A stretch of 63,231 nucleotides of DNA, the filler included, from Octopus bimaculoides (Eukaryota): NCBI RefSeq assembly GCF_001194135.2. It is 4 parts of 4 records of this genome, joined end to end, with 100 filler letters (N's around TTAATTAATTAA, not from the genome) between each part and the next. Parts side by side here need not be neighbours in the genome. Positions count along the whole stretch, not along the records: positions 30,434 to 58,082 come from NC_068986.1; 3 more parts are not named here. One strand, given 5' to 3'. Below the pieces are notes generated by a model that worked only from the letters and a program-made list of their open reading frames with translations, made no database searches and had not been told where the DNA came from. This document shows, in pieces, positions 47,519-53,852 of the stretch (position 1 is its first letter; each line of letters begins with the position of its first letter). A program made the position numbers and the translations under genes.

Positions 47519-47730
47519 GGCGGCGAGCTGGCAGAATCATTAGCGAGCTGGACGAAATGTTTAGCGGTATTTCGCTGCGTTCTGAGTTCAAATTCCGCTG
47601 AAGTCGACTTTGCCTTTCATCCCTTTCAGGGTCGATAAACTAAGTACCAATTGATCACAGGGGTTGATATAACCGACTAGTCCCCTTCCCCAAACTTTCA
47701 GGCCTTGTGCCTATAGTAGATAGGATTATT
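47519..47730 (+). mobile_element. Family-B SINE, full length, upstream of the first exon
   Basis: ggcggcgagctggcagaatcattagc (A box), gagttcaaattcc (B box), tail ggccttgtgcctatagtag. Confidence 0.9.
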
Positions 47731-48885
47731 ACATAGGAAATTAGTATGCCTCGTAACACAGTGATTCCGGAAGAGAAATTGTCCAGTAGAAAACGGGTAA
47801 AGTTTTTGGCGGAGATCATCGTATTTCTACTGAAGATAAAAGGTGGATTTCATTAGATCTCATAATACATCACTCTATATTTGGTGATTAACAACTTAAG
47901 TCAATCCTCAGCAATCTATGGAAAATAAATCAATATCTAGCCAATTATATATTCCATTTAATGACTCATTAACTTTTTACAAATTAAACCTTTTTCTATC
48001 ATTAGTATTGCGAGAAATTCCTTTAAAATTCGATGTGAAGGAAGGAATAACGTAAATAAGTTTTCAATATTCATTGCTTTCTTTCCATTTCTACGATATT
48101 TATATATATTTATATAAATTGTTTTAAAAATTCACGATTTCGTAATCCTTATTCAGCTAAACGTTGTCAATATACCTTTTTATATAGATAGATATACCTC
48201 TTCAACATATGCCTTGTCATTTCGTAGGATCCCTTTTTACAACTCTTGCCAAATTTGATATAAAAATTTGTAATTATGGTTGAATTAATATAGTTTGTGA
48301 TTGAATTATTTCGTTAATAACATTTTAATAGTTTTGTAACAGAGAAAACATTCAACAGAACTTCGTGTCAAACATTAGTTAATAAACAAATCTAGCTTCA
48401 AACTGCGTCTCTAGTACATGTTTAAAGTTAATCCTTAGAAGTTTGTTGACAACTCAACCTGTAATCTTATTATCTTTATTCGAAACAAAGATGATGATGA
48501 CGATGATGATGATGATGATGATGATAATTTCAGGCATTTCAGAAATTGCTTCATATGTGTTTCGATGGTTCTTGCTGGGGTTTAGTTAACTTTGGGTTAG
48601 TTAAAGCAGTGATAACATTGTTTGGTTTAAGATATTCTTTATTTAATTACATAAGATGGAAATATTCAGCGTTGAGAACTATCTCATTTTAGATTAAAAA
48701 ATAGAAAACTCCCTTGTGAAACCAATTATATTTTTTAACTGTTATATGCTAAATTATATCAGTTTATATTTAAAACTATAAATTTTATTTTAAACTAAAA
48801 GAAACATAAAAAGCGTTTGTCTTTTAGAGAAAAGTTTGTAAGTTTCACGTATTATCTAAGTGTTTTGTTTATGTGTTTCTTGCAG

Positions 48886-49033
48886 CACGTCATACATAAG
48901 GATGCAGATGAATTGTTTCTCTTAGTTGGAGCACACAACTTCTACGTTAAATATGAAGTCAAAGTACAAGCATTCAACTTGTTTGGGGATGGACCGAATT
49001 CTACAGTTGCAGAAGTTTACTCTGCTGAAGGAA
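48886..49033 (+). CDS. CNTN: Internal coding exon of a contactin-like (Ig/FnIII) neural adhesion gene; C-terminal half of an FnIII domain
   Basis: Acceptor tttcttgcag|CAC, donor GAAGGAA|gtgcgt; 148 nt, phase 0 in and phase 1 out. Encodes HVIHKDADELFLLVGAHNFYVKYEVKVQAFNLFGDGPNSTVAEVYSAEG, with the FnIII motif YEVKVQAFNxxGxGPxS and the contactin-type SAE linker. Symbol is family-level only; L1/neuroglian is less likely but not excluded. Confidence 0.9.
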
Positions 49034-49916
49034 GTGCGTATCTAAATTTGATAATTTCTCCCCTCAATTTAACTTCCATACAATTACTGCCATAAAGCTG
49101 ATAAATGAAATCATAGAAATACTTCTGTGATATCTAAGAAAATTTGATTAACACTTCTCATAATCTGTCAATTTAAAGTTTGTATGTTTACCGAATCCAC
49201 TTCCTTATCCTCAACATTCAATTGGAATAGTAAATTAACGATAATTTATCTTACAAAATACCTCAAAAATACCTTTAGTTGTTTGTGGTTTTATTTGTTG
49301 TATTTTTAATACAAATTTGACATTTAATCATTTACGTCAATTCTGGGGAAAGAGATGGGAAAAGGTTCTTTTACCTTACGACCGCATAGATAATTTTCTT
49401 AGACTTTGATCAGAATCCAATACAAGTAAAACTTGTAAGAATTAAATTAAAACTTCTTCAATGTTATTTTAAAGAAGTTTATAATCAACTTTTAAAAGTA
49501 TTCGGTAATTTTAAAAACAGAAATATGCCGGAAAAACTATATTTCTGCATTTTCTAAAGTAATGATTTAACTTTACTAAAATCTCCGTAAAAATATATGA
49601 AATGATTTAGATGATGTGATGTTCACCTTTTGCCAAGGATATTAGTGGTGTAATTGTAACGAATTATTTCCATCTCGCCTGACAGTCACCATTGCGTTTT
49701 GTCTTAAATACTGTCAAACAATGTGTAATGAAGAGGTTTAAATTTAATAAAATATAATAGGAACTTGCACGTCTGTCTGTATGTCAAATCATACTTCATT
49801 CTGCTATAAGATGCTAGAGAGAGCATCTAATATAGAAAATAGATTTTGTGTAAACATTAAAACTGCCAGTTTCACTTTTGAAACTTTTAGAAATTAAAAT
49901 TTTATTGCTTTAAGTT

Positions 49917-50122
49917 GCCTCAAAGTTTGGCACAAACCCAGAAATTTGGAGGCATTAGTCGATTACATTCTCCCTAATACTTGACTAGTGCTTATTCTAT
50001 CGACCCTCAATGGATAGTATAGAAAAGTTGGCCTGGGCGAGATTTGAGCCAAGTACGTAAAGAGCCGTATGAAATGCAGTTAAATATTTTCATGACGTTA
50101 TAACTATTCTGCCAGCTCACCT
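49917..50122 (-). mobile_element. Family-B SINE between the two exons
   Basis: caaagtttggcacaaacccagaaattt...tcgaccc...ttctgccagctcacc. Confidence 0.8.
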
Positions 50123-50714
50123 CTATTAAAAGACATTACTGGCTGCCAATAAGAATCAAGTAGATCAATTATTGCCTGTTCGTAAACTTTAAGAATTATG
50201 AACAATGATAAAAGATTATTAAAAATTATTATCTTTATAATTCCCTTAAATAACTTTAAAATTACGACAAAGAACTTCCAAACTTTATATAATCCAAATT
50301 TAAATCATGTCGTATATTAGTTCTATTACATTAACATAAGCGAACAGGATAAGAGCATAATCGTCCCGATATCGCAATGATTAGAAACAAAAGTATTGTT
50401 TCAAACGGCAATTTAAATTTGTGTATCTTCAAAGTCAAATGATGTATAAAATTATTGCATTGCTCTCTAATGCACATTTATGTTATACTGATACCAAATG
50501 ATTTAGGAACATGTAGAGCAACATATATGGATCATGGATATACTTGATTTTAAGGTAGTTTCTTAGATATATCTTGTAAAATTTAATTGATTGCCTTTAT
50601 ATTCAGTCCTAACCTTTCAGTGAGTTGGTCTATAAACTTTTTTGATGCTCAATTATATGAAAATATCAATGAAGATAAGTTCATTAAGAAACCTGCTATA
50701 TGTATCTATATATG

Positions 50715-51420: not shown

Positions 51421-51607
51421 CTATAAAATATTCTCTTTAGCGAGGAGTCTTTGTTACTATTAATCAAATGTTCCTTTTACGATTAAACATTGAAATAATA
51501 GAAATTATTGTTATAGTGTTTGAACAGATTTTTAACTATTACGAGAAAGAGAATATGTAGATAAAACATGATGACAAAGCTATTATAGAATAAATTTCCA
51601 TTTTTAG

Positions 51608-51729
51608 TGCCTACCGTGGTTCCAGAAAATGTTAACGTGGTTACATACAATGGTACTGCTGTTACTGTATTGTGGACCCCAGTGCCTGATACGCATGAAG
51701 ACATGAAAGGAGTTGTCCAAGGATACCAA
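51608..51729 (+). CDS. CNTN: Next coding exon of the contactin-like gene; N-terminal half of the following FnIII domain
   Basis: Acceptor ccatttttag|TG, donor CAA|gtaagt; 122 nt. Phase 1 matches the previous exon (A|TG = Met), giving SAEG-M-PTVVPENVNVVTYNGTAVTVLWTPVPDTHEDMKGVVQGYQ, with the FnIII strand-B Trp and strand-C GY. Confidence 0.92.
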
Positions 51730-51775
51730 GTAAGTATAAATACTCCAATATAAATGTGTCTCTTTAACAAAATAT

Positions 51776-51990
51776 TGGCTTCAAATTTTGGCACAAGGCC
51801 AGAAATTTCGGGGAAGGGCGTAAACCGTTTACGTCGACCCTAGCGATCAACTGGCACTTATTTTACTGATCACGAAAGGATGAAAGGCAAAATCGACTTG
51901 GGTAGAATTTAAATTCCGAATGTAAAGACGGATGAAATGCTACTAGGCATTTTGCTCGGCGTGCTAACGATTCTACCAGCTCGCCGCCTT
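51776..51990 (-). mobile_element. Family-B SINE starting about 46 nt downstream of the second exon
   Basis: ttcaaattttggcacaaggccag...gctaacgattctaccagctcgccgcctt. Confidence 0.9.
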
Positions 51991-53665
51991 TTCACACGAA
52001 CAAAAATATTAACAACAGTAGCTTTTATTTCAGTTAATTTCAAATGATTTGATCATATGATTTTGTTTCTTTGAATAAAGTTTGATACTCGCGTTGAAAC
52101 AAACAAAAGAAATAAATGAAATAATTATGTATTTATCGTTATTGTAGATCGTGTTTCGATAAAATAATTTTCCATTTTCAAATTCTCTTTGATACAGTCA
52201 ATAAAATAATTGGAAAGAAGGTGAAAATATTCCGCTTTGAACTGGAAAAAACTCGCATTTCACATCTATTTGATATCAGTAGGTTATTTGAAAATAAGCA
52301 GAGAAAATTGTAAACTGAAAATAACGAATATTATGTTAATCATTTTAGGATTTCGCAATTAAATATTGAAATATAATTTACAAAAATAGGTTCCAATTCT
52401 GTAATCTTACAATCATTTCATATTTTCTAACACACACATATAAGGATATTTGTGCATGGACACCATCAATATTGCCTTCTCTTTCCTTCTTCTCGTTCTC
52501 ATCCTTATCTTCATCCTTATCTTCATCCTTCCCACTTCACCATCAAGATGTTCATGATCATCAGTTTCATAAACATCAACATGTTTTCGAAACACAATTT
52601 AGTTTTGACTCTCTATCCATAACAAACTTATCAACTAGATCTCTCCGTTTGATGTTTCCGCATCAAGTATTAGCAACAGAATTGAAAAGAAATCTGCAGA
52701 AAGTGTATTATATATTTCAAACAGATCGTTCGTCTTGTCGAATTTAACAAATATTGTATCTGCTTTCCTTTTATTTCACCTAGTTTAGCTGTTGGATGTT
52801 GCGGGAAACCATTGTTGAAATTTTTAATTTTCATATTTATTTTAACAGATAGAGGTCTTCAAGTAAGACAAGTAATATATTCAAGGTTGTTGTTGTTGTT
52901 TTTCACTGGATTTAAATCCGATCCTGATATTAATGCTAGAGGTATTCTGAGATTTATAAAAGTTTTCGCACCATCGAATTAGTCTTGTGAAATTTTCTGT
53001 CCTCCATGAAACCACTTGAAGATTTTTACTTATTCGAACTGAAATGCCAATTGTCTTTACTGCATTGTATAATATTGCAGTCATTGTATAATATTGAGTT
53101 GGATAAATCAGAAGGAAGATGAACAATATACCAAAAGGCATATATGTGATCTAAATTCTGACTAATTCCTTATATTTTCCAAGCATTAACTGAATAAATC
53201 ACTAAACTATGTGCATGGAAAATCGAACAACACTAATCATATTTTAAGAATCTAGCATAATAATGAAAATCTCTCTTAGTCTCTCTGTTAAAAAGTATAT
53301 CTTTGCAGAATGTTTCTAACATTATTATGAAAGCCGACTTAGAAACTAGCTTAAGGATGTCTCATATGTTTGTTGTACATGTAAACATATGAGGCATAAT
53401 AAGAAAGGAAACAGCAATTTCTTCAATAACTTTCAATATAATTGTTGCTAAGCCAGTCGCAAAAACTTTAAAATACAAAGGAAACACATTTCATAAATTT
53501 CCTACAAAAAATATCCCTCTAGAATATTTTTCATCTTCAACAACTAACATTGACTAAAATCCACTAATCTATACACGATCTTATCTGCGAACCAATGTAA
53601 TTATATTAATTCTTATATTTGCCTCTTAGATTCAAATCTCAGAGTTACGGACACAGGTAATTAAT

Positions 53666-53852
53666 GGTTTCAAATTTTGTCACAAGGGTAGCAATTTTGG
53701 AGGAGAGGATGAGTCGATTACATCGACCCTAGTGTTTCACCAGTACTTAATTTCTCGACCTCGGCGGAATTTGAACTCAGAACGTAAAGACGGACACAAT
53801 TCCGCTAAGCATTTTGCCCGGCGTCCTAACGATTCTGCCAGCTCTCCGCTTT
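53666..53852 (-). mobile_element. Family-B SINE with a 15-bp target-site duplication
   Basis: TSD acacaggtaattaat (53651-53665) and acacaggtaatcaat (53853-53867). Confidence 0.92.

What the first reader, a model, noticed from the sequence alone, without database searches (positions are those of the whole stretch)
47519..53852. Two-exon 270-nt module with no stop, inside nested inverted SINEs: candidate endless-ORF circRNA
Seen: exons of 148 and 122 nt total 270 nt, start and end in phase 0, and have no in-frame stop. Back-splicing the 51729 donor to the 48886 acceptor reads ...GYQ|HVIHK... indefinitely, with two Met codons. Family-B SINEs lie at 47519(+), 49917(-), 51245(+), 51776(-) and 53666(-). 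Established: reverse-complementary flanking SINEs promote back-splicing, and competing intra-intron pairs change which circle forms. Inference: pairing of 49917 with 51245 inside the intron would free 47519 to pair with 51776 or 53666, favouring the two-exon circle. Its 90-aa unit is about one circularly permuted FnIII domain, so rolling-circle translation would give a poly-FnIII chain. Skipping both exons also keeps frame. Caveat: phase symmetry may simply reflect ancestral FnIII intron positions.
Basis: partly seen in the sequence, partly recalled or inferred. Interest (0 to 1): 0.7.

Follow-up and report, generated by a model that had tools for sequence, protein, structure and literature searches.

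The report
Ordinary contactin exons among intronic SINEs
Two real, ordinary coding exons of a contactin-like nerve-cell adhesion gene sit among old SINE repeats, and the idea that they form a circular RNA read endlessly rests on properties about a third of exon blocks share, with no evidence that a circle is made.

Summary
Exons 48886-49033 (148 nt) and 51608-51729 (122 nt) have canonical splice sites and sum to 270 nt. They are open only in frame 0, so a circle would read without a stop and holds two AUGs. Five family-B SINEs lie where stated, in the stated orientations. The peptide best matches the FN2-to-FN3 junction of vertebrate contactins (E 1e-18). Exon B is 95% conserved in another species, against 81% for the intron.

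Any in-frame block of internal coding exons gives an endless ORF when circularised, roughly one block in three. Here it follows from introns at equivalent positions in two tandem FnIII domains. The SINE pairs are stable in silico, and an outer pair bracketing both exons appears in the best folds. Both SINEs around exon B are shared with the other species, evolve at the intron's rate, and pair less well there. If this is an octopus, published total RNA-seq found only 296 circRNAs, at low levels. Back-splicing could not be tested. Verdict: ordinary gene architecture, low interest.

The parts
48886..49033 (+). Exon A, 148 nt. It begins in phase 0 and ends after codon position 1. It encodes HVIHKDADELFLLVGAHNFYVKYEVKVQAFNLFGDGPNSTVAEVYSAEG, the C-terminal half of an FnIII domain (contactin FN2 equivalent).
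   Evidence: AG|..|GT boundaries and open frame. PDB phmmer best hits are Contactin-2 residues 750-818.
49034..51607 (+). Internal intron, 2574 nt, phase 1, at the FnIII domain border (AEG|MP). It contains SINE 49904-50132 (-) and SINE 51223-51429 (+).
51608..51729 (+). Exon B, 122 nt, ending in phase 0. It encodes (M)PTVVPENVNVVTYNGTAVTVLWTPVPDTHEDMKGVVQGYQ, the N-terminal third of the next FnIII domain (contactin FN3 equivalent).
   Evidence: Pfam fn3 profile positions 3-32. It is 95% identical, with both splice sites kept, in the orthologous contig L001, against 81% for the adjacent intron.
43238..43325 (+). Family-B SINE, 5' fragment only, in the upstream intron.
47515..47738 (+). Family-B SINE, near full length, 1147 nt upstream of exon A. 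It is 82% identical to the local consensus.
49904..50132 (-). Family-B SINE in the internal intron. It is the most diverged full-length copy (75% to consensus) and the weakest pairing partner.
51223..51429 (+). Family-B SINE, 5'-truncated, 178 nt upstream of exon B. The orthologous copy is present in L001.
51763..51991 (-). Family-B SINE, 33 nt downstream of the exon B donor. The orthologous copy is present in L001. It is the best partner of both 47515(+) and 51223(+).
53654..53857 (-). Family-B SINE with an internal deletion of about 30 nt, in the downstream intron. It pairs with 47515(+) in the full-length MFE.
30434..48885 (+). Upstream intron, at least 18.4 kb to the piece edge. No further FnIII or Ig exon was recognised. 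It contains mariner and other transposon remnants, two more repeat families and four assembly gaps.
51730..58082 (+). Downstream intron, at least 6.35 kb to the piece edge. No further exon was recognised.

Best explanation
These are two ordinary, constitutive-looking internal coding exons of a contactin-like Ig-superfamily adhesion gene. They encode the end of one FnIII domain and the start of the next.

The 270-nt, phase 0-0 geometry and the permuted-FnIII unit arise because the two flanking introns interrupt adjacent tandem FnIII domains at equivalent positions, after the GY motif, about one domain length apart. The introns are long and littered with old retroposons. Six copies of one roughly 215-nt SINE family inserted in both orientations before the split from a related species, and they have since drifted at the neutral intron rate.

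In the pre-mRNA the convergent copies can form imperfect duplexes. The most likely fate of such duplexes is transient intronic dsRNA, edited by ADAR if the host is a cephalopod, and removed with the intron. At most a trace of back-splicing is expected, and there is no dedicated endless-ORF product.

Shown: exons, phases, homology, SINE copies, in-silico pairing, and orthology and neutral drift of the exon-B SINEs. Inferred: fate of the duplexes, absence of a meaningful circle, and the host taxon.
For: - Exon structure and frames.
- Contactin FN2-FN3 homology at E 1e-18, then CNTN4/1/3/5/6, L1 and PTPRF.
- The concatemer reads as a continuous fn3 profile across the junction, so the flanking introns lie at equivalent domain positions.
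- The only cross-intron complementary repeats are family-B SINEs at 71-77% identity.
- The copies are 14-25% diverged from their consensus.
- L001, from another species, is collinear over 51302-52636 and carries both SINEs around exon B. There the SINEs are 79-84% identical versus intron 81% and exon 95%, and their duplex is weaker (-80 versus -129 kcal/mol).
- Alternative pairings are near-degenerate and change with how much RNA is folded.
- Published octopus total RNA-seq of 18 tissues found 296 high-confidence circRNAs at overall low levels. The authors attribute this to ADAR, and find most editing in introns and 3'UTRs: PMC9699675.
- Nearby inverted repeats are the main ADAR substrates across metazoans: PMC9989829.
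Against: - No transcript data could be examined, so absence of a circle is not shown.
- The features that favour back-splicing in other animals are all present: canonical sites, long flanking introns (at least 18.4 and 6.35 kb), and a stable convergent repeat pair bracketing the module, which appears in the MFE.
- Five SINEs in 6.3 kb is somewhat denser than the rest of the piece (P about 0.02). It would be far denser than one published genome-wide annotation for O. bimaculoides, 115,169 copies in 2.7 Gb (PMC6279123), if that annotation is complete.
- The host taxon was not verified with tools.
Confidence: 0.85

Rival explanations
1. Pairing of the outer convergent SINEs (47515 with 51763 or 53654) drives back-splicing of donor 51729 to acceptor 48886. 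This gives a 270-nt two-exon circRNA whose stop-free frame is translated by rolling circle into a chain of chimeric FnIII domains.
For: - The circle would be stop-free with two AUGs, both with a purine at -3.
- The unit equals one fn3 profile.
- The outer pairs are the most stable or near it, at net -109 and -94.5 kcal/mol, with uninterrupted helices of up to 14-25 bp, and they form in MFE folds.
- The flanking introns are long.
- Stop-free (iORF) circRNAs of similar size are documented, for example the 288-nt circTau 12->10 (PMC11724312).
Against: - There is no expression evidence of any kind.
- The ORF property is generic, about 1 in 3 exon blocks.
- The proposed helper pair 49917x51245 is the weakest, and 51245 prefers 51776.
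- The octopus circRNA repertoire is small and low.
- The product would lack the signal peptide, so an extracellular-type FnIII chain would be made in the cytosol (general point in PMC11724312).
- Single-sequence AF2 of the dimer was uninformative, with pLDDT 35.
- No IRES or m6A evidence exists.
Confidence: 0.02
2. The convergent SINEs act mainly as intronic dsRNA substrates for ADAR hyper-editing, which weakens the duplexes, and they have no effect on exon choice. This is compatible with the best explanation and describes the fate of the duplexes.
For: - The predicted duplexes have 121-161 intermolecular bp.
- Inverted nearby repeats, SINEs included, are the prime ADAR targets across metazoans (PMC9989829).
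- In octopus most editing is intronic or in 3'UTRs, at hairpins (PMC9699675).
Against: Editing cannot be seen in genomic sequence. The copies are old and only 69-77% complementary, and editing prefers young repeats. The taxon is unverified.
Confidence: 0.45
3. The nearest and strong inner pair 51223(+) x 51763(-), 333 nt apart, loops out exon B alone. This would favour a 122-nt single-exon circle or exon B skipping, which shifts the frame, rather than the two-exon circle. Likewise 47515 x 49904 could loop out exon A co-transcriptionally.
For: - The inner pair is net -94.9 kcal/mol with a 23-bp uninterrupted helix, and it forms in the full-length MFE.
- Prefix folds to 50200 and 51500 pair 47515 with 49904 around exon A.
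Against: Exons of 122 or 148 nt are very short for single-exon circles (my knowledge: single-exon circles tend to come from unusually long exons). Such circles have stops. The L001 orthologue shows this pair decaying. There is no transcript evidence.
Confidence: 0.04
4. The two exons form an in-frame cassette that is alternatively skipped. The result would be a contactin isoform with one FnIII domain fewer, an FN2 N-half fused to an FN3 C-half. Any circle would be a by-product of the skipped lariat.
For: Skipping 270 nt between phase-0 introns keeps frame. The fusion point is at equivalent positions of two FnIII domains, so a whole chimeric domain would result.
Against: The splice sites look strong, with a GTAAGT donor and good polypyrimidine tracts. 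There are no transcript data, and the neighbouring exons are outside the piece.
Confidence: 0.07

Closest known systems
Inverted-repeat (Alu/SINE)-mediated exon circularisation in animals (Jeck 2013; Zhang 2014; Liang & Wilusz 2014; Ivanov 2015, cited in PMC9699675 and reviewed in PMC11724312)
   Same: Canonical splice sites, long flanking introns, convergent SINE copies in both flanking introns, and competing intra-intron and alternative pairs.
   Different: No back-splice junction has been observed here. Complementarity is only 69-77% over 95-200 nt. The host is probably a cephalopod, where circRNAs are reported to be few and low.
Stop-free (iORF) circRNAs translated by rolling circle, e.g. 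circTau 12->10 (288 nt) and circNFIB (PMC11724312)
   Same: Length divisible by three, no stop in the native frame, derived from internal coding exons, and of similar size.
   Different: Those have demonstrated circles and reporter or antibody evidence of translation. This one is a purely arithmetical candidate. The unit here happens to equal one FnIII fold.
Vertebrate contactins (CNTN2/TAG-1, CNTN1, 3-6), FN2-FN3 region (PDB 8k3j, 9ba4, 5e7l)
   Same: Best sequence match, E 1e-18, covering the FN2 F-G strands (YxVxVxAxNxxGxGP), the linker and the FN3 A-C strands up to GY.
   Different: Only 90 residues are available. L1 and LAR-type phosphatases score nearly as well (E 1e-14). The Ig domains and GPI signal lie outside the piece, so family membership is provisional.
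tRNA-derived SINEs of octopods (recalled: Ohshima & Okada 1994 OK/OR SINEs; the octopus-specific SINE burst of the 2015 octopus genome paper). This is memory only and was not checked.
   Same: About 215 nt, dispersed in both orientations, with 5'-truncated copies and a B-box-like GAGTTCAAATTCC motif seen by eye.
   Different: Rfam and ARAGORN find no tRNA-like match. No consensus from the literature was available for comparison.

Membership tests
Exonic circRNA made by repeat-mediated back-splicing | Canonical acceptor upstream and donor downstream of the circularised block | tested here: met
   CAG|CAC at 48885/6 and CAA|GTAAGT at 51729/30.
Exonic circRNA made by repeat-mediated back-splicing | Reverse-complementary repeats in the two flanking introns able to pair | tested here: met
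   47515(+) pairs with 51763(-) and 53654(-) at net -109 and -94.5 kcal/mol. Both pairs appear in MFE folds.
Exonic circRNA made by repeat-mediated back-splicing | Cross-exon pairing outcompetes intra-intron or alternative pairings | tested here: inconclusive
The schemes are near-degenerate. The full fold has an outer A+B pair plus an inner exon-B-only pair.
Exonic circRNA made by repeat-mediated back-splicing | Observed back-splice junction, RNase R resistance | not testable with these tools
   No RNA-seq access. The protein database holds neither the linear nor the circular junction for this gene.
Stop-free (iORF) translated circRNA | Circle length divisible by 3 with no stop in one frame, plus a start codon | tested here: met
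   270 nt, frame 0 open over 3 laps, ATG at codons 50 and 82. The property is generic.
Stop-free (iORF) translated circRNA | Evidence of translation (polysomes, footprints, junction peptide) | not testable with these tools
   None available.
Contactin family (6 Ig + 4 FnIII, GPI-anchored) | FnIII sequence closest to contactin FN2-FN3 | tested here: met
   Contactin-2 at E 1e-18. Contactins take 8 of the top 9 places.
Contactin family (6 Ig + 4 FnIII, GPI-anchored) | Six N-terminal Ig domains, four FnIII domains, GPI signal | not testable with these tools
   The other exons lie outside the 27.6-kb piece.
FnIII domain (Pfam PF00041) as the repeating unit of the hypothetical product | Exon B followed by exon A aligns end to end with the fn3 profile | tested here: met
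   Residues 55-133 of the concatemer match profile positions 3-82 of 84, 53 bits. Foldability is untested, since AF2 gave pLDDT 35.
tRNA-derived SINE | Short, dispersed, multi-copy, in both orientations, with 5'-truncated members | tested here: met
   Six copies, 61-86% identical to the consensus.
tRNA-derived SINE | tRNA-like head with pol III A and B boxes | tested here: inconclusive
   No Rfam hit at E<=1 and no ARAGORN hit. A B-box-like motif is seen by eye only.

The most novel reading that the evidence does not exclude
In neural tissue the outer SINE pair drives a 270-nt two-exon circle from a contactin-like gene. The circle would be translated round and round into a cytosolic chain of chimeric FnIII domains, each built from the A-C strands of FN3 and the C'-G strands of FN2. 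This would be a protein polymer encoded by a single domain-sized RNA circle, in an animal where circRNAs are otherwise scarce.
Probability: 0.01. Interest if true: 0.6.

Novelty: already known. Interest (0 to 1): 0.12.

Why it matters
As it stands it matters little. It is a correct annotation of two exons of a contactin-like gene and of six SINE copies in its introns.

Its use is as a caution. Stop-free, in-frame exon blocks flanked by inverted SINEs are what tandem-domain genes in repeat-rich genomes produce by default. A genome scan that flags them will flag a large share of all internal exons.

If the circle were shown to exist and be translated, it would be a neat case of a domain-periodic iORF circRNA and a rare functional circRNA in a cephalopod. 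Nothing here raises that above the base rate.

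Tried and rejected
- **Homologue search.** The 5.8-billion-protein search with the 90-aa product gave a single hit: an ORF called on an unspliced Logan contig. So no orthologous mRNA, no annotated protein and no junction-bearing contig were available. 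The search is uninformative for or against a circle.
- **Structure prediction.** AlphaFold2 on two tandem permuted units, single sequence, gave pLDDT 35 and was unusable. No fold search was run on it.
- **RNA family scans.** Rfam (E<=1) and ARAGORN over the SINEs found nothing relevant. The weak snoRNA and mir-297 matches are far below gathering scores and lie on microsatellites.
- **Neighbouring exons.** I looked by open-frame listing, FnIII motif regexes and reading all + strand open stretches of at least 28 aa. None were found, but they could lie outside the piece or in the four N gaps.
- **Host species.** A transposon ORF search gave no hits, and the SRA run id appears in no held paper. 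The cephalopod assignment stays an inference from memory of the SINE and from genome style.
- **SINE density.** The 2015 octopus genome paper was not held. One paper search matched 'sinensis' instead of SINE. The only figure found is 115,169 copies, 1.8% of the O. bimaculoides genome, which probably under-counts lineage-specific SINEs.
- **Contactin intron phases.** A literature search gave nothing usable. The two-exons-per-FnIII, phase-1-at-borders pattern in vertebrate contactin and L1 genes is recalled, not checked.
- **Duplex stability as a refutation.** This was rejected, because all pairs are far below shuffled controls.

Full report
**What is there.**
The sequence at 47400-54000 contains two short exons on the + strand.
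- Exon A, 48886-49033, is 148 nt. It is preceded by a polypyrimidine tract and CAG and followed by GTGCGT.
- Exon B, 51608-51729, is 122 nt. It is preceded by TTTTTAG and followed by the consensus donor GTAAGT.
- Joined, they give 270 nt that are open only in frame 0. The other two frames stop within 12 codons.
- The intron between them is phase 1, with the Met codon split A|TG. The outer boundaries are both phase 0.
- A head-to-tail circle reads ...GVVQGYQ|HVIHKD... with no stop over three laps and holds ATG codons 50 and 82.
- Circles of exon A or exon B alone run into stops.

**What the exons encode.**
- phmmer against PDB sequences puts Contactin-2 first (E 1e-18), followed by contactins 4, 1, 3, 5 and 6, L1 and the LAR-type phosphatases.
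- The best stretch runs from the F-G strands of FN2 (YxVxVxAxNxxGxGP), through the linker, into FN3 as far as the GY motif.
- Pfam sees only a weak fn3 match in the linear 90 residues. This is expected for two domain fragments.
- A Logan contig from another sequencing run (L001, SRR11869385) is collinear with 51302-52636 at 79% identity. Within it exon B is 95% identical with both splice sites intact, while the flanking intron is 81%.
- These are real, selectively constrained exons of a contactin-like adhesion gene.
- No other FnIII or Ig exon is recognisable on the + strand of the piece. The flanking introns are therefore at least 18.4 kb and 6.35 kb, unless a small exon hides in one of the four assembly gaps.

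**Why the module is phase-symmetric and domain-sized.**
- When three units are concatenated, Pfam fn3 aligns as one uninterrupted stretch from residue 55 to 133, profile positions 3-82 of 84, straight across the back-splice junction.
- So the intron before exon A cuts FN2 at the same place in the fold as the intron after exon B cuts FN3. The two cuts are one domain length apart.
- Equal phase, a length divisible by three and a permuted-FnIII unit are then automatic.
- More generally, internal coding exons have no in-frame stop by definition. An endless ORF on circularisation needs only equal flanking phases, about 0.36 with typical phase frequencies, and a Met somewhere in 90 codons, about 0.86 (the phase frequencies are my assumption from general knowledge).
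- Roughly a third of all exon blocks qualify.

**The SINEs.**
- Alignment and an nhmmer profile confirm one family of about 215 nt with six copies in the piece: 43238 (+, 5' fragment), 47515-47738 (+), 49904-50132 (-), 51223-51429 (+, 5'-truncated), 51763-51991 (-) and 53654-53857 (-, internal deletion).
- The copies are 14-25% diverged from their own consensus.
- Rfam and ARAGORN do not recognise a tRNA-like head.
- A blastn of intron against intron shows that family B supplies the only complementary sequences between the upstream and downstream introns: 71.5% over 200 nt for 47519x51776, and 77% over 95 nt for 47519x53666.
- Across exon B alone the match is 74% over 167 nt. The intra-intron pair 49917x51245 is 69% over 116 nt.
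- With two copies upstream and two downstream in random orientation, at least one convergent flanking pair is expected 7 times in 8 (my arithmetic).

**Do the pairs fold?** Yes.
- RNAduplex energies are two to three times those of shuffled partners.
- Net RNAcofold gains over self-folding are as follows:

| SINE pair | Brackets | Net energy (kcal/mol) |
|---|---|---|
| 47519 x 51776 | exons A+B | -109 |
| 51245 x 51776 | exon B only | -95 |
| 47519 x 53666 | exons A+B | -94.5 |
| 51245 x 53666 | exon B only | -82 |
| 47519 x 49917 | exon A only | -53 |
| 49917 x 51245 | intra-intron | -53.5 |

- Folding the whole 6.55-kb stretch gives 51245x51776 (142 bp, bracketing exon B only, arms 333 nt apart) nested inside 47519x53666 (135 bp). 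SINE 49917 is left without a SINE partner.
- Folding growing prefixes gives 47519x49917 around exon A first.
- The landscape is thus near-degenerate. An outer pair bracketing both exons is a good solution.
- However, the specific argument that 49917x51245 frees 47519 rests on the weakest duplex. The closest and strong pair loops out exon B alone.

**Is the pairing under selection?**
- For the one pair that can be examined, no.
- Both SINEs around exon B are present at orthologous positions in L001, so they predate the species split.
- They have diverged 16-21%, like the surrounding intron at 19%.
- Over the same span their mutual duplex is weaker in L001 (-80 versus -129 kcal/mol).

**Prior from the literature.**
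- I could not verify the host with tools.
- From memory, the SINE head, the 32% GC, the mariner remnants and the long introns look like an octopod genome. This is an inference.
- If so, the relevant survey is PMC9699675. Total RNA-seq of 18 octopus tissues gave 296 high-confidence circRNAs, mostly in a single tissue and at overall low levels.
- The authors ascribe this to ADAR melting intronic duplexes. They found most editing in introns and 3'UTRs at hairpins.
- Across metazoans, nearby inverted repeats including SINEs are the main ADAR substrates (PMC9989829).
- Stop-free circRNAs translated by rolling circle are a known kind, for example the 288-nt circTau 12->10. Their products lack signal sequences (PMC11724312).
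- So even a positive result would be a new member of a known kind. The FnIII chain would be made in the cytosol, not on the cell surface.

**Verdict.**
- The best-supported reading is ordinary exons of a contactin-like gene in SINE-rich introns (confidence about 0.85). The convergent SINEs most likely form edited, transient intronic dsRNA.
- I put a detectable two-exon circle at a few percent and a translated one at about 1%.
- Single-sequence structure prediction of the concatemer failed, with pLDDT 35.
- Back-splice reads, RNase R resistance and the junction peptide remain the decisive tests, and none can be run here.

Noticed in passing
window 34594-35246 (- strand): Remnants of a Mos1/mariner-type transposase in the upstream intron, beside assembly gap 34201-34588. 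Pfam Transposase_1 hits at E 4e-25 and HTH_48 at E 4e-12.
   Followed up: partly
window 40014-41074 (- strand): A run of open stretches that ends in a DUF4817 helix-turn-helix (E 4e-7). This is probably another decayed DNA-transposon gene. It has no relatives in the large protein database.
   Followed up: partly
window 36549-36768, 39013-39219, 41136-41290; also 33754-33890 / 46413-46549: Two further repeat families lie in the upstream intron. One has three copies at 77-83% identity, including an inverted pair 2.3 kb apart. The other is an 85% inverted pair 12.5 kb apart. All lie within one intron, so they would compete with cross-exon pairing rather than promote it.
   Followed up: partly
window 42229-42471 (+ strand): An open stretch carries a C-x2-C-x8-H-x4-C motif (CRICRQNGETLWHITSQC). 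By eye it resembles the C-terminal zinc knuckle of a non-LTR retrotransposon ORF2. It sits just 5' of the SINE fragment at 43238. Pfam gave no hit.
   Followed up: partly
window 48491-48527: A (GAT)n microsatellite about 360 nt upstream of the exon A acceptor. A weak sub-threshold Rfam snoRNA match (SNORD11B, 27.8 bits against a gathering score of 50) lies on it and is almost certainly spurious.
   Followed up: no
window 54249-54612: Three tandem copies of a unit of about 140 nt (83-nt core, 64-71% identity) in the downstream intron.
   Followed up: no
L001 1-1387 (Logan SRR11869385) versus window 51302-52636: An orthologous contig from an unidentified related species. It has 79% identity overall, the same two SINE insertions around exon B, one amino-acid change in exon B (E to K in DTHEDM), and an 11-nt gap just after the donor.
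   Followed up: yes
window 34201-34588, 35463-36392, 39269-39489, 45198-45682: Four runs of N (assembly gaps) in the upstream intron, often bordered by (TA)n, (CA)n or (TG)n microsatellites. Small exons or further SINE copies could be hidden there.
   Followed up: no
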